Made by a program: the position numbers and the translations under genes. From Octopus sinensis (Eukaryota), in assembly GCF_006345805.1 (NCBI RefSeq), contig NC_043011.1:43226464-43290463 (forward strand): a DNA stretch of 64,000 bases. The letters are read 5' to 3'. The notes below the pieces were generated by a model. That model saw only the letters and a program-made list of their open reading frames with translations, did not search any database and was not told where the DNA came from. Shown here piece by piece: positions 2,525 to 56,119 of the stretch (its first letter is position 1; each line of letters begins with the position of its first letter).

Positions 2525-2574
2525 CTCGACAACGTATGGTAAACACCAACCGGTGTTTACCATACGTTGACGAG
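2525..2574. repeat. Inverted repeat: 18-bp perfect stem plus 4 more bp after one mismatch, 4-nt loop
   Basis: ctcg-a-caacgtatggtaaacacc / aacc / ggtgtttaccatacgttg-a-cgag. Confidence 0.95.
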
Positions 2575-2605
2575 AGGCAAAAACCTCGAAACTATAGTCC
2601 GTATG
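2561..2605 (+). ncRNA. Minimal type-I hammerhead ribozyme motif (U3.G8 variant)
   Basis: Stem I CAUACG/CGUAUG; core UUGACGA; stem II GAGG-CAAAAA-CCUC; GAA; palindromic stem III ACUAUAGU; GUC cleavage triplet ending at 2599. Confidence 0.8.
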
Positions 2606-3169
2606 TATCACTTAGGTTTTCGAGAGGGGATGACTTCCCTTTGCAAATATCAGAAGGGCGCAGAAAGTGTGTCTAAAGCCAGCTGGAGACGACGATCTCC
2701 TGGGGCTAAAAGCTTCAGTAACACCCCCCCCCCAGTGGCTAGCCACATTCATATGGCTAGTACACTTTACGTTAACTTGTAATATAGCTTTCGCTTTAAC
2801 TACATATAAAACCAAGATATTTCCAGAAGAAATATCTATAGTCAATTCAATATTTGTAACTGTTCTAGGCAGCCAGGGAACACCTGCTTTATCCGCTCAG
2901 TCTGCTAGAAATTGCATTCAACTATACATAAATCAGTCTTTGCTATTCTGAGAAAGAAAAGATGCGTATCAACAGTCATTAGCTCTTATTTTATAGATTA
3001 GAGAGACACAGAGGCAAATTTGTCTCCGTTGCAACTTGACTGTAGACCGAGATAGTTTGAAGGTTACCTAAACGCTGCACAAGATCGTGTCCTTTCTCCC
3101 AGGAAGTGACATCAACCATAATACAGTTGAATAGAATAGATAGAATTGCAGTGAAGAAGCATTCTTTTG

Positions 3170-3638: not shown

Positions 3639-4454
3639 ATGTTGAAAGTATGAAGAAAATTTCTTCAGTTAAATTGATTCTTGTCCCAAATTGAGTAAAT
3701 TAACACACAAGACTAAGCTAGAATCTGCCAATATAGTAGAATACCAACAGAAACAAAATGCAGGTAATCTATAACACAAGCACACTCTGTTCCTTGAACG
3801 CATGGCAGCTTTGACTATTCTGAGTGCTTCATCCCCGACCAACCTATAAACCGCATGTCTGTTTTAACAAGACTGACGTAACAAGAACAAAACAAGAATA
3901 ACAATAACATTTTGCTAAAATGATCGATAACTCGACGTTTTATATCAAAAATAAGGTGAAGTAAAATAACGCTCACGTCACTACTAACAAATATCAAACA
4001 AAAAGCAAGACAATTCTTTACAGTGAAATATTTCAATCTCATTTCTTAAAGATATATTTTCTGAAGAAAATAAGGATTTATCACCGTATAATAATCTTAA
4101 AATAGAGAGAGCTACAGTGAGACGATAGCATGATAAAATCTCCTTGAGATTTCCATATTATATATAGAGATTAATGTGGAAATAAAAACCCTTGAGATGA
4201 ATACACAAAACATTTCTTTAGGAAAAGATATCGCTTGTATATATTGGGCATATTATTTTAGAATGACTAAGCATAAAGAAAAGAAATATTTTAGTTGAAG
4301 TAGAAAATGTTAATCTGTGATGTCCAATCATGTCCCAGCAACACTAACACTGAAAGTTGCGTAAAATTGTTTCCATGGAAGAGAGAAAGCGCCCCGCGAT
4401 CTCAGGTTTCGCCTGATTCCTTTCTTCCTTTATTTCTATTCATCTACTCTGTTT

Positions 4455-4913
4455 TACCATTTTACCTTTTGCTTGCTTCAGTCTTCGGACTACGGCCATG
4501 CTGGGACACCGCCTTGAAGGGTTTTTAGTCGAGCATATTGACTCCCACCAGTACTTGTTTTCTAAAGTCTGGCACTTATTTTTATCGGTCTCTTTTTCCA
4601 GTCGCTAAAAAACGGGAACGTAAACAAACCAGCACCAGTTGTCAAGCGGTGAGGGCTGACACAAAGATATATATACACCTGAGTGTATATAACAACCCCC
4701 AAACCACACAAACATATATATACGTCTGTGTGTATATATACATATGTATATACATATATTCATAAGACAGTTTTCTTTCAATTTCCATCTACCACGTCAA
4801 CGCACAATGTTTTGGTCGGCTCGTGGCTATAGCAGAAAGTAGTTACTTATGGTGGCACGAACCCGGATCCATGTTGTTGAGAAACAAACTTCTATCCACA
4901 CGGCAACACCTGT
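4455..4913 (-). mobile_element. SINE family A, older copy
   Basis: Diverged match to the family A consensus over head, body and tail. Confidence 0.8.
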
Positions 4914-4939
4914 AAGATAATATTACCGTTATTGCCAAA

Positions 4940-5125
4940 GAAAGAAAATAACTCGCTGGGTAGATTGGTAGAATCGATATTTGTTCTGGTACCTTACGCC
5001 TTAAATTCAACCCCTCTCGAGGCCAGCTTTGTCTTTCAATCTACCGTGGTCAACAAAAAATGTAACATTAAAATACTGGGCTCGATTTACTCGAATAGTT
5101 CCTTGCCCCTAAGCGGTGTGCATAT
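4940..5125 (+). mobile_element. SINE family B, old copy
   Basis: Diverged match: ggtagaatcg...aaattca...gggctcgatttactcga. Confidence 0.6.
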
Positions 5126-5144
5126 GATAGAAATAGTTAATGAA

Positions 5145-5496
5145 GGCGGCGAGCTGACAGAAATTCCGCCGAGGTCGACTTTGCCTTTCATCCTTTCGGG
5201 GTCGATAAATTAAGTACCAGTTACGCACTAGAGTCGATGTAATCGTCTTGATCCCTTTGTCTGTCCTTGTTTGTCCCCTCAATGTTTAGCCCTTGTGGGT
5301 AGTGAAGAAACAGATATTTCGTCTGCCGCTACGTTCTGAGTTCAAATTCTGCCGAGGTCGACTTTGCCTTTCATCCTCTGAGGTCGATAAATTAAGTACC
5401 AGTTACGCACTGGGGTCGATATAATCAACTTAATCCCTTTGTCTTTCCTTGTTTTTCCCTTCTATATTTACCCCCTTGTGGGCAATACAGAAATAA
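5145..5496 (+). mobile_element. SINE family B dimer; first unit has an internal head deletion
   Basis: Two tandem B bodies; 14-bp TSD gaaatagttaatga at 5130-5143 and 5497-5510. Confidence 0.9.
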
Positions 5497-6111
5497 GAAA
5501 TAGTTAATGATCTTGGCATACATGGATGCCTTCCAGTATCTAACGGAGTGTCTTTCTAAACTGAATTCGCAATCATACTAAATTCCAATTTGCCTTCCCA
5601 TAATCCCTAGGAGACAACAACAAAATAAAATAACCTTCATATGATTTTTTTTTTATAATCGATCGCTTCCCGAACCCAAACTCTGATGCTGTTAAGCCAA
5701 ATTGAGAATGACATATCATTATATAAACATTATGAAAACGCCTGCGCATCAGATAACTATACTTGGCTATGCAATGGTACGATAACTTGCCAAATCCCAA
5801 CCTACATTACGGTTATCAAACTTTCTTTCTCATCATCATCATAATCATTATCACTATCTTCAAATAAAGAAGTCTCTGGCGAAGGGCAAGAGATTTAATA
5901 CCTTACATATTTTAATAGCCTCAAGAACACCTCTTCTTTTTACCCTCTCCTATGAAATCGTTTTTGCCAAATGAGGTTGTCACTTGTTTTATTTAAGTTA
6001 TTCATGTATTCGTTTTCTGGATTTTTCCCTATAAAGCAGATCTTCAAGTTCGACTGAAACTGGTTAGACTTACACGTATGTAAATTATAAAATAAGTGCC
6101 ATGTATGTTTC

Positions 6112-6147
<36 letters not shown>

Positions 6148-6150
<3 letters not shown>

Positions 6151-6329
6151 AGAATTCACAAAAAAAAACAAAAGACGAAGACAGGTGGTGTAGACAACAA
6201 ACAGATGTGTTAGTATGACGCTCGGGAAGTGAAAAAGTCTTTAACGTTTCGAGCCTAACCTCTTCCACAGAAATGAACTCAAAAAGAATCAAGGAGAGAA
6301 AATAAAGAATGTATAGTGACTAGCGATCT
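6148..6329 (-). mobile_element. Short non-autonomous Penelope-like repeat carrying a degenerate hammerhead motif (6239-6273)
   Basis: Minus strand reads UUU-CUGUGGA-A-GAG-GUUAGG-CUC-GAAAC-GUU-AAA; inserted at a (TA)n run; Penelope link is inferred from the motif type. Confidence 0.5.
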
Positions 6330-6363
6330 AAAACAGTTTAATTCGGATTTCGTACTACTTCAG

Positions 6364-6559
6364 GTATCGCAGGCAGTTTAAGGGCCGTGTCACCCCAGGT
6401 TCATGGAATATCCAAGTGAATGGAGAGGTGCAGCGAGTCCAAGATGGCCTCTCCGTTCACTTGGATATTCTACAAACTTGACGAGACAGGTTCCGTCAGG
6501 GGCCTTGAAGTAGCAATGAATCCGAACAACACTCTTTTGAATAATACATGTAACTTCCA
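6364..6559 (+). other. Candidate non-coding exon (196 bp) containing the miRNA-like hairpin
   Basis: Acceptor tactacttcag|G and donor CCA|GTAAGT; stop codons in all three forward frames. Confidence 0.4.
6396..6480 (+). ncRNA. Candidate pri-miRNA hairpin
   Basis: 25-bp upper stem, 2x2 internal loop, 6-bp lower stem, 19-nt loop; all three non-Watson-Crick pairs in the helices are G.U on the plus strand. Confidence 0.55.
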
Positions 6560-6624
6560 GTAAGTGTGTTGGGTGTCCTTTCTTTCGCTTCTCCACTCAT
6601 ATGTGTGCGTGTGTGTGTTTGTGT

Positions 6625-6945
6625 TTTACTTGCTTTAATCATTGGACTGCGGCTATGCTGGAGCACCGCTTTAAAGGGTTCTAGTCGAAATGATCGATCT
6701 CAGTACTTATTTTTTAAAGTTTAGTATTTATTCGGTCACATTTTTGCCGAACCTCTAACTAGCGGGGGAGGTAAACAAACGAGCTTACCCAGGCTTATAT
6801 ATATGTGTGTATATATATACTGGACTTCTATTAGTTTCCACCTCCCAAATCCACTCGCAAGGATTTGGTGGTCCTGAGGCTATATTAGAAGACACTTGCG
6901 TTGCGTTGCCCATGGTGTCAGAACCATGGTGACTGGACCCAGAAC
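6625..6945 (-). mobile_element. SINE family A, partial
   Basis: Diverged match to the A tail and body. Confidence 0.7.
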
Positions 6946-7289
6946 CGAGTGGGAAAAGAAAGAGAAAGAGTTGTTTTGAAGCCTGAAGTAACTTCTCAAA
7001 ACCGTTACTCCGAGTTTGACGCAACCAATCTTCTGACTGAAGATCAATTACGTGAAACACAAACTAACGTTCTGTAATGTTTTTCAGCTTCAATAAAACT
7101 CAAAATATAAGCTCTACATTAGTATTTGAGTATTATTTTACCTCCTTGCTTTCATTTGTGTAATTGCACGTATACACACACATATACAAACACGCAAACA
7201 CATACACGAACACACTCAAACTCACAGACACAAGCATACACACAAACACACACACGCACACACACTCACACATATATACATTTATATTG

Positions 7290-7735
7290 GTAGTTAAGGC
7301 AGAGAGCAAGCAGAATGATTCGGACACCAGAAGAAAATACTTAGCAGTATTTCTCCTGGCTTCATGTTCTGAGTCCAAATCCCGTCGAGGTAAACTTTGC
7401 CTGTTATCCGTTCGGGATCAATCATTGGTGTTGTTGTAATCGACTTTCCCCCGCCCTGAATTTTAGGCTTTGTACCTGTAGTAGAAAGGATATAAGTAGG
7501 GACAGAAGATAGCTAGGTGGTAGAAACATTTGCATTCAGGATGAAATAATTGCAGCGTTTCTCCCCGGTTTTACGCTTTGAATTCAAATTCCACCGAGGT
7601 CAACTTTGTTGTTCATCCTTTCGATGTCGATGAAAAAATAGATAAATAAAAATAAATAAATAAATAACCAGTCGGGCTCTGACTCGATGTAATCGACTCA
7701 CCCGTTGCCCTGAAGCTTGTGCAATATTTGAAACC
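7290..7735 (+). mobile_element. Two tandem old SINE family B copies
   Basis: Two degenerate B heads (gagttcaaat-type B box) with gtaatcgact tails. Confidence 0.7.
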
Positions 7736-7999
7736 GATAAGAGTATTGACAGAATAATGTTATATATAAGACATTGGGCAATAGAATTAAAAGATCAATT
7801 ACATAAATTATTGCTAGTATAAGTAGAATAACTTTCGTTATGTATAACTATAAACGGTTGTCTATAATCGATGTTGCAGACGACCATAATTTAATGGCGT
7901 TTATTTCATAAATTTCACTGCTTGAAAATTGTACACTGTGGCCCACTACAGACTTTTCAACTCAGAATTAAATGGTTTTGCAATCATGTACCACACACA

Positions 8000-8065
<66 letters not shown>

Positions 8066-8179
8066 CGCGTACATATACACACACTCACACGCATACATGT
8101 GTAACCAAGATGTGCCATCTATATTGAGAAACTTTGCACTGAATCCACTCTCTTTTGTCGACGTTATTATGTTCCAACA

Positions 8180-9380
8180 AGTGCAGTAATTATGTCTTCC
8201 TATCATTAGTGTGGGTTGAGGCAATTTTAAACATAAATATTTACGGGCACATAACTAGTGCTGATTTGAGGCTGCATTCGGGTCCAAATAGCACGGTTCT
8301 TGACCTCCCCCACTTCACACATCCAGCAAGTATATTAAAACAGTTTAGATCCCCTCGCGCATCCACTTTCGATCCACTTTCTCCTATTGCTCAGGTGGGA
8401 TATTCGGACCCTTATCTTCCCATGCGCGAGTTCGTGATGATAACCTCAACTACAGCACGCCTTACTTCGGTGCTTTTGTGTTCTTAGCTCCCCATATGTA
8501 CTCTGATCTTGTATTGCTGATCGTTTCCTCGCTGAACTCTTTATACATCATCCTAACCCTGCACTTTACCACTTTGTAATATCCCTTCGGCCACTGATGA
8601 TAGAGCTAGCTGTAAATGCCCAGGCCTAATGTTAATCCCCGTTGCTGAGATACTTGGAGAAGTTCCAAGCCAGCTTCTCACCTCTCGACTCTTTTCACCG
8701 TTTTTGGTGGGTTTTTATATATCAGCAACTACCACTTGAATCTCAGCTGCTGCCCGTTATAGAAGAACCGCGACTTGAATTCACTGGTCATTTGTTTTTC
8801 AAATAACAGCCAATTTCTGTTTGGTCGGCAAACTGTTTCTGTCTGTAAGAGAAGCATCAGATCACTGCGGTAGGTATTTTATTAGATTCTTCTCCATGAA
8901 TGGTATGACCTCCTTCCAAAACCAGAACTTGTTGCTCGCTTTCGCACTCCTGATCACCAAGCCTCTTGAATTTTATCTTCTCTGTTAAATCACCAAATCG
9001 CCAAAGTGCTTTACTTGTACGTGGAGTCTTGATATCCAACTTGAAGAATCCTCCAAAACATATATATATACACAGACAGACGCTTGCATATGCGCGCATG
9101 CGTGTGTATTTACACACACACACACACACTCACACACACACAAACACATGACAAATTCACAGAGCCGGGCTTTGCAGTATTTATTCAAGCTCTTTGCATT
9201 CTGAGATCAAATCCCCAAATGGCTCCCTTGGGTGGTAGACTTAACCCGTTGCTCCGTTTAACACTACAAACTTCCACCTTGGGTGCCTTTAGCGCACTTC
9301 GCTCTGTTGCAAACATTGGAACTTACGCACATTCTGCTGGCACTGATTTCATTTGCAAAATAAATATGACTCCACCATTT
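8180..9380 (-). pseudogene. Possible decayed L1/Tx1-type LINE ORF2 C-terminal remnant, interrupted by a microsatellite
   Basis: Frameshifted peptides KVEVCSVKRSNGLSLP, GGFFKLDIK...KALWRF, KFWFWKEVI and a CWMC zinc-knuckle-like relic; resemblance judged by eye only. Confidence 0.35.
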
Positions 9381-19194: not shown

Positions 19195-19560
19195 CGGAGA
19201 AATGGTAAGTCCATTACATCGACCCCAGTAATCAACTGGTACTTATTTTATCGATCCCCAAAACGATGAAAGGCTTCGGCGGAGCTTGAACATAGAACGT
19301 AAAGACGAACGAAATGCCACTAACCATTTTTTCCACCAGCTCACTGCTTTAACGATTCTGCCAGCTCGCTGCTTTAATTATTCTAGTGTATCCTTCAACA
19401 TTTCTAGGATAACTAAGGTGCCGAGCTGGCAGAATCGTTACGCGCCGCAGAAAATGCTTAGCGGCATTTCATTTGGATTTTTACGTTTTAGTTCAAATTC
19501 AATTTTTGTCCTACGTCTTTTTGGGATCGATAAATTAAGTATCAGTTGCATGCTGGGATC
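19195..19560. mobile_element. Divergently oriented pair of old SINE B copies (minus 19195-19372, plus 19418-19560)
   Basis: B heads on opposite strands about 45 bp apart. Confidence 0.75.
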
Positions 19561-30285: not shown

Positions 30286-30579
30286 GTGGAAGCACATGGC
30301 CAAGTGGTTAGAGCAGCGGACTCGCGGTCGAGGGATCGCGGGTTCGAGTCTCAGACCGGGCGATGTGTGTGTTTATGAGCGAAACACCTATGCTCCACGC
30401 CGCTCCAGCAGAAAGTAATGGCGAACTTTCGCCACAACTTTCTCTCATTCTTTCCTCCTGCATCTTGCAGCTCATCTGCGACGGCCCGACGTCCCGTCCA
30501 GATGGGGAACCTATACGCCAAGGAAACCGGGAAACCGGCCCTTATGAGCCAGGCATGGCTCGAGAAGGAACAAGCAACA
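30286..30579 (+). mobile_element. SINE family C, tail type 3 (V/Meta-domain-like segment)
   Basis: 12-bp TSD acatagaggttt at 30274-30285 and 30580-30591; contains gacgtcccgtccag...gaaaccggg. Confidence 0.9.
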
Positions 30580-47635: not shown

Positions 47636-48917
47636 TACGAAGGTCAGCCGAAAAGTTCAGAGGCTGACCAAAGTACTTTCATGTAATGTAACCAAATTAG
47701 GTTTATTTTCACCTATTTCCCCATTGCGGTCCACACGCTTCTTCCATAGATGTTGTAGTTCCTACTGCTGAAGAAAATGTCCTCCTGTTGTTCAATACAG
47801 TCATCAACAGCAGACATCATCATCACTGTGATACTGGTTCCGAGCCAAATGTTTATTTTCCATGTTGAAGGACAGATGATAGTCAGATGGTGCTAAATCA
47901 GAAGAATAAGGAGGGTAATCAACCATTTCTAAGCCTCCGTTACGCACATCAGCCATTGAAACCAACGACTTATGTGGTGGAGGATTGTCCTTAACAAACA
48001 AGGCCCCTTGTTTTTCTTACCTAAATTTTCTTGGGCGTTTGCTCTTGACAGCCCTTCGTAACTGCACTAGCATAGTACTCTCTATTGATAGTGTGGCCGT
48101 TTTGAAGATAGCAAATAAACAAAATGACTATTGCATCCAAAATAACTCTAGTCATCACCTTCCCTGCAGATGAAACGATGGTGTCGTTCTTTGGTGCATG
48201 TGAGGAGACTTTTTCCCACTGCATGGATTATCACTTTCTGATTAAAGTTATGAAACCAAAATTCATCCTGGGTTAGATAACTTTCGAGGAAACTAGCTAG
48301 ATCTACCTCAAACAAAATCTACCTGATTTTCCCTTGATGGGATCAGCTTGGTGCGCTTTAGATCAGGTGTCAGAAGACGTGGCACACACTATGCAGAAAT
48401 CTTTGCCATGCCGTATTCATTGTGCAGAATGTTCTCAACTTTCTCGCAAGCTATGCTAATAGAATTGACTATTTGACTTTCAGTCAGTCGCCTGTCATCC
48501 GTCACCATGTGATGAACACGATCAACGTTTCCCTCGATCGTGACAGTTGAAGGATATCCAGACCTTGGGTCATCTTCAAGTCTCTCCCTTCCACTCTTAA
48601 ATTCAGCTGTCCCGTTTTGCATTGTTGATAAAGCTGGATCATCATCCCATAATGTAGCAACCATTTCTGCATGAATGCCGTTTGGACTCAAACCTTTTTA
48701 TTTCGGTTACTTGATACTGCGATGCCAAATTTTATCGATTTTCAAGAAAGTCGTTACTAGTTATTTTGAAGTTTTATTTAAATAGCCAGATATCAGTTTA
48801 GCTGGAAAAAAAAACAATGCAGTTATTATCAAAAATATGTAAAATTAATGCATGCAAAATTTCACAGCTCTAGCATCACTCCTTCATAGGTTATGAACTT
48901 TTCAGGCCAGCCTCGTA
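47636..48917 (-). mobile_element. Full-length decayed mariner DNA transposon (about 1.28 kb)
   Basis: Imperfect TIRs tacgaaggtcagccgaaaagttca / tgaacttttcaggccagcctcgta with TA ends. Confidence 0.92.
47704..48740 (-). pseudogene. Mariner transposase pseudogene (frameshifts and stops)
   Basis: ORF pieces FKSGRERLEDDPRSGYPST (HTH region), SAGKVM, DNPPPH...YPPYSSDLAPSDYHL (mariner YSPDLAP motif). Confidence 0.92.
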
Positions 48918-51254: not shown

Positions 51255-51393
51255 CGTATGTGCCTCAGAGTAAATAATTCACATGATCATGCTGAAGAAG
51301 CATTGCTGCGTAACATTGACATTTCTGTTGGAAAGTAACCGAGATGCTTTAAAATTTCAGAGAGAAAAGAGAGGAAACGAAAAGTGCGTGTGT

Positions 51394-52176
51394 GTGAGAT
51401 TGAGTGAGTGAGTGAGTGAGTGAGTGAGTGAGTGAGTGAGTGAGTGAGTGAGTGAGTGAGTGAGTGAGTGAGTGAGTGGTGAGTGAGTGAGTGAGTTTGT
51501 GAGTGAGTGAGTGTGTGAGTGAGTGATTGAGTGAGTGAAGAGTGAGTGAGTGAGTGATTGAGGGAGTGAGTGAGTGAGTGAGTGAGTGGAGTGTGTGAGG
51601 GAGTGAGTGGGAGTGGTGAGTGAGTGAGTGAGTGAGTGAGTGAGTGAGTGAGTGAGTGAGTGAGTGAGTGAGTGAGTGAGTGTGTGAGTGAGTGAGTGAG
51701 TGTGGTGAGTGAGTGAGTGGATGAGTGTGTGAGTGAGTGAGTGAGTGAGTGAGTGAGTTGAGTGAGTGAGTGAGTGAGTAGTGTGTGAGTGAGTGAGTGA
51801 GTGAGTGTGTGAGTGAGTGGAGTGAGTGAGTGAGTGAGTGATGAGGTGAGTGAGTGAGTGGTGTGTGAGATTGATGAGTGAGTGAGTGAGTGGTGGGGTG
51901 AGTGAGTGAGTGAGATGAGTGTGTGAGATGGAGTGAGTGAGTGAGTGAGTGAGTGTGTGAGTGAGTGAGTGTGTGAGTGAGTGAGTGGGTGAGTGAGTGG
52001 AGTGAGTGAGTGAGTGGAGTGAGGAGTGAGTGTGTGAGTGAGTGAGTGGGTGAGTGAGTGAGTGAGTGAGTGAGTGAGTGTGTGAGATTGAGTGAGTGAG
52101 TGAGTGAGTGAGTGTGAGTGAGTGATGGGTGAGTGAGTGAGTGAGTGAGTGAGTGAGTGAGTGAGTGAGTGAGTGT
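51394..52176. repeat. Long degenerate (GAGT)n array abutting the assembly gap
   Basis: About 780 bp of TGAG units; source of the HSLT-repeat ORFs. Confidence 0.95.
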
Positions 52177-52276
52177 NNNNNNNNNNNNNNNNNNNNNNNN
52201 NNNNNNNNNNNNNNNNNNNNNNNNNNNNNNNNNNNNNNNNNNNNNNNNNNNNNNNNNNNNNNNNNNNNNNNNNNNN
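52177..52276. other. Assembly gap (100 N)
   Basis: Run of N. Confidence 1.
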
Positions 52277-53995: not shown

Positions 53996-54028
<33 letters not shown>

Positions 54029-54223
54029 GTGTGTGTATGTATGTATATATATTATATATATATAGATATATATATATATATATATATATACGTATATACA
54101 TATATACATATAGGACACACAACACATACACATATATATACGTATATATATCTATATATGCATATATATCTATATGTATATACACATACATACATACATA
54201 TATGTATGCATGTATGTGTCTGC

Positions 54224-54256
<33 letters not shown>

Positions 54257-54442
54257 ATATATATATATCTGCACATTGCATACACATGCATACACATATG
54301 TAAGTATATATACATATATATACTATATATGTATGTATATATATATGTATATATATATGCATATATGTATATGTATATATATATGTATATATATATATAT
54401 TATATATATGTATGTATATATATAATTTATACATATACATAT

Positions 54443-54474
<32 letters not shown>

Positions 54475-54921
54475 ATATATATTATAATATATATATACAT
54501 ATATATATATATGCGTGCGTAACTACATATTATGTGTGTGTGTGAATGCATGCCCACGTGTACTCGAAAGGCACACGCACACACACAAGAGACATACATA
54601 GGCATATGTGTATCGGTGTGCGTGTTTAAATTTCCCATGAGAGACTTCCGTTTAAATTATGTATGATTAAGTTAATGTGTGGCTAAGTTCAGGCTATTAT
54701 AACTAAGGTGATGAATCGAAAATAATCTTTAATCAATTGAGATTATAACCCTATTGAGAAGACAAGCCATCAGTGTTAATGAAAATTATTCTGAAAAGGA
54801 AAGAGCAAGAGAGTTCACGATATTTGAATCGCTCAGCGATGAAATGCAAAGAGAGTAGAGCGCGTCTGATACATACATACATACATACATACATACATAC
54901 ATACATACATACATACATACA

Positions 54922-54953
<32 letters not shown>

Positions 54954-55253
54954 CATACATGCATACATATATATAGAGGGAGAGAGACAGAGAGGGGGAC
55001 AGACAGACAGAGGGAGTGAGTGAGAGAGAAAGAGTGTTGGTGAGAGAAAGGGAGAGAGAGAAAAATACAGATACATACATACATATATGCATATATACAG
55101 ATACATACATACGTATATGCATATATATATATATATATGCATATATATATATATACATATATGTATGCATGGATATATGTATATATATATATATATATAC
55201 ATATATACATACATACATATAAATATATACATACATATACATATATACATACA

Positions 55254-55284
<31 letters not shown>

Positions 55285-55519
55285 ATATACATACACACAT
55301 GCAAACATGAGCAAATTACTTCCACAAATGACAACACATAAGAAATGTATATATGTATATATAAATGTATATATAGTGAGAGGGAGAGAAAGAGAGAGGG
55401 AAGGAGAGAGAAGGAGAGAAATAGATAGATAAATGGGTAGATAGAATAGATAGCTAGATACATATATTCATAAGACAGACATGCAAACATACATACATAC
55501 AAATGTACACACACATATA

Positions 55520-55824: not shown

Positions 55825-56119
55825 CTGTTGTGTCTGGGGAGAGTCTATCTCTATTAGTGCCTATTATTTAACACACTCACCGGAAAATTTCCACTTATTA
55901 CTTTTTTATTTTCTAAAATTTTTTCGTGCGTCTTGCAACCTTTTCAATAGTCTTGACTCAATAGTCTTGACTCAAAGTCTTGAGAGTCAAGACTATTGAA
56001 AAGGTTGCAAGACGCAACGAAAAATTTTTAGAAAATAAAAAGAAATAAGTGGAAATTTTACCGGTGAGTGTGTTAAATAATAAGGCACTAAAAGAAAATG
56101 ACTCTCCCATACACAACAG
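55825..56119. repeat. Foldback element with arms of about 135 bp, each carrying a hammerhead-like motif
   Basis: ctgttgtgt...gtcttgactc and gagtcaagac...acacaacag are reverse complements; centre carries repeated aatagtcttgactc units. Confidence 0.93.
55993..56031 (+). ncRNA. Minimal hammerhead-like motif, U3:A8 variant (mirror copy at 55913-55950 on the minus strand)
   Basis: CUA-UUGAAAA-G-GUUGC-AAGAC-GCAAC-GAA-AAAUUU-U-UAG; stem I is only 3 bp. Confidence 0.55.

What the first reader, a model, noticed from the sequence alone, without database searches (positions are those of the whole stretch)
6396..6480. Candidate novel microRNA hairpin with canonical geometry
Seen: a 33-position stem in unique sequence (6 bp, 2x2 loop, 25 bp) with a 19-nt loop. 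The three non-Watson-Crick pairs are all G.U on the plus strand, which points to RNA-level structure on that strand. Placing the Drosha cut 11 nt above the base gives two 22-nt arms with 2-nt 3-prime overhangs: 5p AAUAUCCAAGUGAAUGGAGAGG (6407-6428) and 3p UCUCCGUUCACUUGGAUAUUCU (6450-6471, 5-prime U). I do not recognise it as a conserved bilaterian or molluscan family. Basal UG, apical UGU and CNNC motifs are absent at the expected positions. Established: coleoid cephalopods have a large lineage-specific miRNA expansion.
Basis: partly seen in the sequence, partly recalled or inferred. Interest (0 to 1): 0.72.

Follow-up and report, generated by a model that had tools for sequence, protein, structure and literature searches.

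The report
Hairpin core of a decaying inverted repeat
The microRNA-shaped hairpin is real, but it is the best-preserved core of a roughly 210-base inverted repeat in repeat-rich octopus-type DNA, and nothing reachable here shows that it is a microRNA gene rather than one of the many hairpins such genomes carry.

Summary
The hairpin at 6396-6480 exists as described and is far beyond chance (-50.4 kcal/mol, z -9.5). It is single-copy in the window.

Three things change the picture:
1. It is the centre of a longer inverted repeat. The arms are 6330-6428 and 6448-6538, about 74% alike, with an 8-nt indel.
2. The strand argument fails. All five arm differences in the 33-position stem are transitions. 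Three give G.U on the plus strand; the two in the "2x2 loop" give G.U on the minus strand. Both strands fold well.
3. Hairpins of this quality are not rare here. Three unique-sequence ones lie in this 64 kb. The other two draw equal or better sub-threshold Rfam microRNA hits than the mir-26 hit here (29.3 bits, threshold 57).

The basal UG and CNNC motifs are missing at the expected positions; an apical GUG is present. No seed site for either arm appears in the held octopus miRNA target tables.

One mild point favours constraint: the top 25 bp is better kept (2/25 mismatches) than the rest (22/66), post-hoc p about 0.02.

No small-RNA reads or orthologous loci could be reached. Most likely this is a relic inverted duplication or foldback element. 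A young lineage-specific miRNA stays possible, at about 10%.

The parts
6396..6480 (.). Core hairpin: 6 bp, a 2x2 C.A/A.C internal loop, 26 bp, and a 17-19 nt apical loop. It folds on either strand.
   Evidence: RNA + strand -50.4 kcal/mol (z -9.5); RNA - strand -39.5 (z -6.95); DNA -24.1 (z -8.1).
6407..6428 (+). Hypothetical 5p arm (AAUAUCCAAGUGAAUGGAGAGG). The register is assumed, not observed.
   Evidence: Geometry. No read data. With a 13-bp lower stem instead of 11, the start would shift to about 6409.
6429..6449 (+). 21 nt between the hypothetical arms (terminal loop plus closing pairs). GUG lies at 6428-6430.
6450..6471 (+). Hypothetical 3p arm (UCUCCGUUCACUUGGAUAUUCU). The register is assumed, not observed.
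   Evidence: Geometry. No read data.
6330..6428 (.). Left arm of the extended inverted repeat. It carries 8 extra bases (6363-6370) relative to the right arm.
   Evidence: Gapped alignment. Ungapped arms 6371-6428/6448-6505 at 72%. The outer block 6330-6362 versus 6506-6538 matches at 25/33 positions, and only 4 of 2000 shuffles score as well.
6448..6538 (.). Right arm of the extended inverted repeat.
   Evidence: The 231-nt folds keep the outer helix 6342-6364/6505-6527 on both strands.
5497..6605 (.). A 1.1-kb stretch not repeated elsewhere in the window, in which the inverted repeat lies. It is bounded by SINE-like repeats (5161-5496 and 6606-6899), contains an (AT)n run at about 6110-6150 and ends in a (TG)n run at about 6599-6625.
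   Evidence: Self-BLAST. Sequence.

Best explanation
The feature is a relic inverted repeat of about 209 nt (arms 6330-6428 and 6448-6538, 19-nt spacer) in gene-poor, SINE- and microsatellite-rich octopod DNA.

Inferred origin: a single DNA-level event made two reverse-complementary copies side by side. This could have been a local inverted duplication, a replication template switch, or insertion of a foldback or MITE-type element. The arms have since diverged to about 74% identity overall. The innermost 33 positions have only five differences, all transitions, so they still fold into a 34-bp stem that happens to have pre-miRNA dimensions.

Shown: the repeat, its extent, its mutational pattern, its single-copy state in 64 kb of window plus 45 kb of O. 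bimaculoides DNA, and the existence of other hairpins of the same quality nearby.

Inferred: it is not a conserved miRNA gene. If it lies in a transcript, the RNA hairpin could be cut by Drosha and Dicer at a low, background level. Both the origin and the lack of function are inferences, not results.
For:
- The structure is symmetric at DNA level. Both strands fold with similar z-scores, and the five inner differences split 3:2 between plus-strand and minus-strand wobbles. That is what neutral transitions in a DNA palindrome give.
- The duplex is near-perfect, at -59 kcal/mol per 100 nt.
- Two further unique-sequence hairpins with at least 24/25 pairs lie in the same 64 kb: 19350-19440, and 55927-56016 with perfect arms of about 45 bp. 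This genome therefore makes such structures often. Extrapolated, that is of the order of 10^5 per genome, against 164 annotated miRNA genes.
- No Rfam family reaches threshold in the whole window. The mir-26 hit of 29.3 bits is matched or beaten by unrelated-family hits on the other two hairpins: MIR8675 at 31.4 bits and mir-4650 at 38.8 bits.
- Basal UG and CNNC are absent at the canonical offsets.
- No seed-site k-mer for any register of either arm appears among annotated O. vulgaris miRNA target sites in the held supplements.
- No coding exon or Pfam domain was found in the window.
- Template switching is a documented source of perfect hairpins and of new miRNA-like loci (PMC10710096, PMC8794818).
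Against: - The apical 25 bp is better preserved between arms (2/25 mismatches) than the remaining aligned 66 positions (22/66). Fisher p=0.016 and binomial p=0.0035. Inner differences are transitions only, 5:0 against 6:13 outside (p=0.011). This could reflect selection for pairing, as in a functional RNA. It is post hoc, since the region was picked for being well paired. A younger secondary template switch or gene conversion would give the same pattern.
- Stem length (about 34 bp), precursor length (65 nt), loop size and the apical GUG fit Microprocessor substrates.
- No target-site duplication was seen at the repeat ends, and no second copy in 109 kb. A transposon origin is therefore unsupported.
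- Absence from the annotated set was tested only through truncated tables.
Confidence: 0.65

Rival explanations
1. It is a genuine young, lineage-specific microRNA gene. It was born from the inverted duplication, is transcribed on the plus (or minus) strand, and is processed by Drosha and Dicer into a 22-nt duplex. Selection now keeps the upper stem while the outer arms decay.
For: - Canonical dimensions: 34-bp stem, 65-nt precursor and a 2-nt overhang geometry that is possible.
- GUG at the apical junction.
- Apical 25 bp significantly better preserved than the rest of the repeat, with only transitions tolerated.
- Single-copy in 109 kb of octopod DNA examined.
- The octopus lineage has many novel miRNA families, and the authors state that species-specific ones were deliberately left unannotated.
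Against: - No expression or conservation data could be obtained.
- There is no strand signal.
- The duplex is nearly perfect, which is atypical for established animal miRNAs.
- UG and CNNC are missing.
- No known family fits.
- No matching seed site appears in the held target tables.
- The base rate is very low, given three equally good hairpins per 64 kb.
- No evidence of a host gene or neighbouring miRNA was found in the window.
Confidence: 0.12
2. It is one copy of a moderately repeated foldback or MITE-type transposable element whose whole body is a palindrome. The human MADE1 elements that give rise to mir-548 are the analogue (from my own knowledge).
For: - A nearly whole-length palindrome of about 210 nt.
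- It is embedded in a region dense in SINE-like repeats.
- Arm divergence of about 26% would fit an old insertion.
Against: - No other copy in the 64-kb window, nor in 45 kb of O. bimaculoides DNA. SINE families show 6-23 copies in the window and 131 matches between the O. bimaculoides locus and the window.
- No target-site duplication flanks 6330/6538 or 6342/6527 (read).
- This excludes only very high copy numbers. Families of fewer than about 10^4 copies would be missed.
Confidence: 0.15
3. It is a long hairpin inside a longer transcript, acting as a substrate for endo-siRNA production or for ADAR editing rather than as a miRNA.
For: - The 231-nt fold is one long, imperfect, roughly 95-bp-arm hairpin on the minus strand and a branched one on the plus strand.
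- The central duplex is near-perfect.
- Cephalopod nervous tissue is rich in A-to-I editing (abstract of PMC9699675).
Against: - There is no evidence of transcription.
- The outer arms are too diverged (56-76% identity) for efficient long-dsRNA processing.
- No gene was detected in the window.
Confidence: 0.06

Closest known systems
Young miRNA-like hairpins created by inverted duplication or replication template switching (Mönttinen et al. 2023, PMC10710096; Mönttinen and Löytynoja 2022, PMC8794818)
   Same: A near-perfect stem of pre-miRNA size arising at DNA level in otherwise unique sequence. It is symmetric on both strands, and its few later changes are transitions.
   Different: The repeat here is much longer (arms of about 99 nt) and mostly decayed. 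The creating event cannot be reconstructed without an outgroup sequence, and no expression is shown.
Canonical animal miRNA precursors, as curated in MirGeneDB and including the octopus-specific 'Novel' families of Zolotarov et al. 2022 (PMC9699675)
   Same: The stem is about 34 bp, the precursor about 65 nt and the loop over 8 nt. More than 16 nt of the arms are complementary. A GUG lies at the apical junction.
   Different: There are no read evidence and no second-species evidence. The duplex is almost perfect. Basal UG and CNNC are not at the canonical offsets. No matching seed site appears in the held target tables. The hairpin is embedded in a longer inverted repeat.
MITE-derived miRNA hairpins such as MADE1/mir-548 (from my own knowledge)
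   Same: A whole-element palindrome that folds into a near-perfect hairpin of miRNA-precursor size.
   Different: No additional copies and no target-site duplication were found. At 209 nt it is much longer than the 80-bp MADE1.
Rfam mir-26 (RF00244)
   Same: It shares a CAAGU..A core on the 5' arm and the hairpin shape, scoring 29.3 bits.
   Different: The score is far below the gathering score of 57. The seed differs: AUAUCCA here (or UAUCCAA/AUCCAAG if the 5' end shifts by 1-2 nt), against UCAAGUA for mir-26 (the latter from my own knowledge). Other hairpins in the window draw equal or better hits to unrelated families.

Membership tests
Canonical animal microRNA (MirGeneDB-type criteria) | Hairpin with at least 16 nt of complementarity between the two arms | tested here: met
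   22/22 positions pair (21 Watson-Crick plus 1 G.U) between 6407-6428 and 6448-6469.
Canonical animal microRNA (MirGeneDB-type criteria) | Precursor and loop dimensions: stem of about 35 bp, loop of at least 8 nt, pre-miRNA of about 55-70 nt | tested here: met
   34 stem positions, 21 nt between the arms and a 65-nt precursor. The flanks are partly paired in the longer repeat rather than clearly single-stranded.
Canonical animal microRNA (MirGeneDB-type criteria) | 20-26 nt reads from both arms with 2-nt 3' offsets (the Drosha and Dicer signatures) | not testable with these tools
   No small-RNA reads are reachable. The relevant data are GSE192550 / PRJNA791920.
Canonical animal microRNA (MirGeneDB-type criteria) | Uniform 5' ends of the mature reads | not testable with these tools
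   No reads are available.
Canonical animal microRNA (MirGeneDB-type criteria) | Presence of the hairpin in a second species (the criterion used for octopus novel families) | not testable with these tools
   The criterion is stated. All routes failed: ORF-based look-ups, a metagenome scan, and the one O. bimaculoides locus fetched, which is not orthologous.
Canonical animal microRNA (MirGeneDB-type criteria) | Processing motifs: basal UG at -14, apical UGU/GUG, CNNC at +16 to +18. These are enhancers, not strictly defining. | tested here: inconclusive
   UG is at -19 only and CNNC at +23 only. GUG is present at 6428-6430.
Annotated Octopus vulgaris/bimaculoides miRNA set (Zolotarov et al. 2022) | The seed of either arm matches a listed miRNA seed or target-site k-mer | tested here: inconclusive
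   The k-mers AACGGAG, GAACGGA, ACGGAGA, CGGAGAG and CTTGGAT occur nowhere in the held files. TGGATAT, TTGGATA and GGATATT occur only inside 8-mers labelled 'Non-seed kmer', and none appears in the miRNA target-site lists of Data S3. Both files were truncated when stored, and no precursor sequences are held.
Rfam mir-26 (RF00244) | Score at or above the family gathering threshold | tested here: not met
   29.3 bits against 57. Nothing in the window reaches any gathering score.
MITE / foldback transposable element | Multiple dispersed copies | tested here: inconclusive
   There is one copy in the 64-kb window and none in 45 kb of O. bimaculoides. This excludes only very abundant families.
MITE / foldback transposable element | Target-site duplication flanking the terminal inverted repeats | tested here: not met
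   No direct repeat flanks 6330/6538. A TTAA precedes 6342, but CAAC follows 6526 (sequence, alignment).
Template-switch / inverted-duplication hairpin | An outgroup lacks the inverted copy while the source arm is present | not testable with these tools
   No orthologous sequence is available.

The most novel reading that the evidence does not exclude
An octopus-lineage microRNA caught part-way through its birth. An inverted duplication of about 100 nt produced a long hairpin. Only its apical 25-34 bp, the part Drosha and Dicer use, is being held together by selection, tolerating only wobble-compatible transitions, while the outer arms decay neutrally.
Probability: 0.1. Interest if true: 0.4.

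Novelty: new member of a known kind. Interest (0 to 1): 0.18.

Why it matters
If the hairpin proved to be an expressed, precisely processed miRNA, it would be one more lineage-specific addition to the already documented octopus miRNA expansion. It would also be a tidy example of miRNA birth from an inverted duplication. That is useful but not surprising.

If it is a relic inverted repeat, as seems more likely, its value is cautionary. In this genome, miRNA-shaped hairpins occur several times per 64 kb. Sub-threshold covariance-model hits to miRNA families are generic for them. Counting G.U pairs while ignoring the mirror-image C.A mismatches gives a false strand signal.

Tried and rejected
1. 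Known RNA family. An Rfam E-value scan of 4000-9000 gave only a sub-threshold mir-26 hit. A whole-window gathering scan gave nothing. Control scans showed the other hairpins draw similar hits. Membership is rejected.
2. tRNA or SINE origin. ARAGORN found no tRNA, and self-BLAST found no similarity to the window's repeats.
3. Literature look-up of the arm sequences, as 22-mers and 13-mers in RNA and DNA spelling, gave no paper. The Zolotarov supplements hold no precursor sequences and no matching seed sites. The MirGeneDB 3.0 paper has no held supplements.
4. Comparative data through ORFs. A homologue search with the 68-aa ORF spanning the hairpin gave nothing. Exact look-ups of 11 window ORFs found none on record. 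A metagenome scan for a 21-mer matching both arms gave 0 hits.
5. A mariner-like ORF (48392-48697) was used to identify the organism. It has 21 homologues, including one O. bimaculoides protein. An ENA contig carrying a homologue shares only the mariner element with the window. The O. bimaculoides locus shares the window's repeat families but not the hairpin.
6. A search for printed SINE consensus strings in papers gave nothing.
7. A Pfam scan of the ten least repetitive ORFs gave no domains, so no host gene could be named.
8. Chance origin is rejected: 0 of 200 shuffles fold as well.
9. Assembly artefact was considered and rejected. The repeat is short, imperfect and internal, far from the only N run (52177-52276).

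Full report
**1. The observation**

The apical loop is 17-19 nt.
- MFE is -50.4 kcal/mol against -19.6 ± 3.3 for dinucleotide shuffles, z -9.46, with none of 200 shuffles as good.
- The reverse strand also folds well: -39.5 kcal/mol, z -6.95. So does the DNA: -24.1, z -8.1.
- The 22-nt arm occurs only here and, with one mismatch, as its own inverted partner.
- BLAST of 6250-6650 against the window finds only the self-inverted match and microsatellite hits to the (TG)n run at 6599-6625.
- The hairpin lies in a 1.1-kb stretch, 5497-6605, that is not repeated in the window. SINE-like repeats flank that stretch.

**2.

*The inverted repeat is longer.*
- The repeat finder reports arms 6371-6428/6448-6505 at 72%.
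- A 231-nt fold adds an outer helix, 6342-6364 with 6505-6527 (-94.1 kcal/mol, z -7.9). The minus strand folds into one long hairpin of about 95-nt arms (-87.2, z -7.25).
- A gapped alignment of the left half against the reverse complement of the right half gives arms 6330-6428 and 6448-6538, with 8 extra bases (6363-6370) on the left.
- The outer block alone (25/33 identical) is reached by only 4 of 2000 shuffles. It is also in register with the core, which that test does not credit.
- Identity between the arms is 85% in the inner 33 positions, 56% in the middle 25 and 76% in the outer 33.

The "miRNA hairpin" is therefore the best-preserved centre of an old inverted repeat of about 209 nt.

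*The strand argument does not hold.*
- The five differences between the arms in the 33-position stem are all transitions.
- Three of them (6398.6478, 6405.6471, 6421.6455) are G.U on the plus strand.
- The two that make the "2x2 loop" (6402.6474 and 6403.6473) are C.A and A.C on the plus strand, which means U.G and G.U on the minus strand.
- A 3:2 split carries no strand information (binomial p = 1).
- One difference (6421 T against C) is a CpG-to-TpG change, read directly from the sequence.

*Hairpins of this quality are not rare in this DNA.*
- I scanned for ungapped 25-position stems with at least 24 pairs, allowing wobble on one strand, and loops of 3-60 nt. This found 28 loci.
- Twenty-five of them are microsatellite palindromes. 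Three lie in complex sequence: this one, 19350-19440 and 55927-56016.
- The last is a perfect palindrome with arms of about 45 bp (-71.9 kcal/mol). A sliding RNAfold scan agrees.
- Three per 64 kb extrapolates, very roughly, to about 10^5 per multi-gigabase genome. Zolotarov et al. accepted 164 miRNA genes in O. vulgaris, and they stress that many lowly expressed hairpin products are background (PMC9699675).

**3. Known families**

- No Rfam family reaches its gathering score anywhere in the window.
- In an E-value scan the hairpin hits mir-26 at 29.3 bits, against a threshold of 57. The alignment shares little beyond CAAGU and the hairpin shape.
- Under the same conditions, the hairpin at 19348-19441 hits plant MIR8675 at 31.4 bits, and the one at 55912-56032 hits mir-4650 at 38.8 bits. 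Such hits are generic to good hairpins.
- ARAGORN finds no tRNA in the window.

**4. miRNA-specific features that can be read from sequence**

The lower stem has 11 positions, and total stem length is 34, close to the roughly 35 bp that Microprocessor prefers (my own knowledge).
- Basal UG is at -19, not -14. The only downstream CNNC is at +23, not +16 to +18.
- A GUG lies at positions 22-24 from the assumed 5p start (6428-6430).
- The duplex has one G.U and no mismatch or bulge, and the hairpin's MFE is -59 kcal/mol per 100 nt. This is tighter than usual for established animal miRNAs. It is typical of young hairpins made by inverted duplication or derived from transposons (my own knowledge).

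**5. A point in favour of constraint**

- The apical 25 bp (6404-6428) has 2 mismatches in 25. The remaining 66 aligned positions have 22, plus the indel. Fisher p = 0.016; binomial p = 0.0035.
- Transitions to transversions are 5:0 inside the stem and 6:13 outside it (p = 0.011).
- This is what selection for pairing would give. It is also what a more recent template switch or arm-to-arm conversion of the centre would give.
- The test is post hoc, because the region was chosen for being well paired.
- Template switching is documented both to create and to maintain perfect RNA hairpins, and to seed new miRNA genes (PMC10710096, PMC8794818).

**6. Organism and context**

- The window is 30-44% G+C and full of microsatellites and SINE-like repeats.
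- A mariner-like relic (ORF at 48392-48697) has 21 homologues, including an uncharacterised O. bimaculoides protein.
- The 45-kb O. bimaculoides locus around that gene (GCA_001194135.2, CM046602.1) shares 131 BLAST segments with the window, at up to 94% identity. These are the same dispersed repeat families.
- The hairpin has no match in that locus.
- No ORF in the window has a Pfam domain, and none looks like a coding exon. No host gene can be named.

**7. Attempts to reach decisive data**

- The arm sequences appear in no searchable paper.
- The supplements of Zolotarov et al. hold no precursor sequences. They do list seed-site k-mers and conserved target sites for the annotated miRNAs.
Those that occur at all are labelled non-seed. 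The files were truncated when stored, so this is weak negative evidence.
- Routes to orthologous DNA all failed.

**8. Verdict**

The structure is real and made by a DNA-level event, not by chance.
- The best-supported reading (confidence 0.65) is a relic inverted duplication, template-switch product or foldback element. Its core retains pre-miRNA geometry but has no demonstrated function.
- A bona fide young, lineage-specific miRNA cannot be excluded (0.12). It would be favoured by the heterogeneity in arm preservation.
- A moderately repeated MITE (0.15) and a long-hairpin siRNA or ADAR substrate (0.06) are the other rivals.
- It is not a member of mir-26 or of any Rfam family.

Even in the best case this is one more species-level miRNA in a lineage already known for its miRNA expansion, so interest is low.

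Noticed in passing
window 55914-56030: A perfect palindrome with arms of about 45 bp in complex sequence (-71.9 kcal/mol). A tandem AATAGTCTTGACTC x2 sits near the apex. It is a much younger inverted repeat than the target, and it draws a 38.8-bit sub-threshold hit to mir-4650.
   Followed up: partly
window 19350-19440: A third unique-sequence hairpin: a stem of 19 bp, then 7 bp, then further pairs, with a loop region of about 41 nt (-53 kcal/mol). It draws a 31.4-bit sub-threshold hit to plant MIR8675.
   Followed up: partly
window 2560-2620 (minus strand): An 18-bp perfect palindromic hairpin core, extended by a further 4 bp on each side (-51 kcal/mol for the 120-nt context).
   Followed up: no
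window 47644-48913: A mariner-like transposon relic. It is 73% identical over 1.3 kb to a locus on O. bimaculoides CM046602.1. Homologues of its ORF (48392-48697, minus strand) carry HTH_32 and HTH_48 domains, but the ORF itself scores no Pfam domain.
   Followed up: partly
window 5161-5496, 6606-6899, 4522-4913 and many others: Dispersed SINE-like repeat families, with 23, 10 and 6 copies in the window. They are shared with O. bimaculoides at up to 94% identity, which identifies the window as octopod DNA.
   Followed up: partly
window 51383-52175 and 52177-52276: A (AGTG)n array of about 198 units, which causes the GC-skew spike of 0.51. It abuts a run of 100 N, which is an assembly gap.
   Followed up: no
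window 30290-30370: A tRNA-like, G+C-rich cloverleaf-type segment (GGCCAAGTGGTTAGAGCAGCGGACTCGCGG...GGGTTCGAGTC). It is probably the head of a tRNA-derived SINE. ARAGORN did not call it as a tRNA.
   Followed up: no
window 54000-55300 and other microsatellite blocks: TA/TG-rich microsatellite palindromes draw many sub-threshold Rfam hits of up to 53 bits to mir-297, mir-466, mir-3149 and mir-1277. These are artefacts of low-complexity hairpins.
   Followed up: yes
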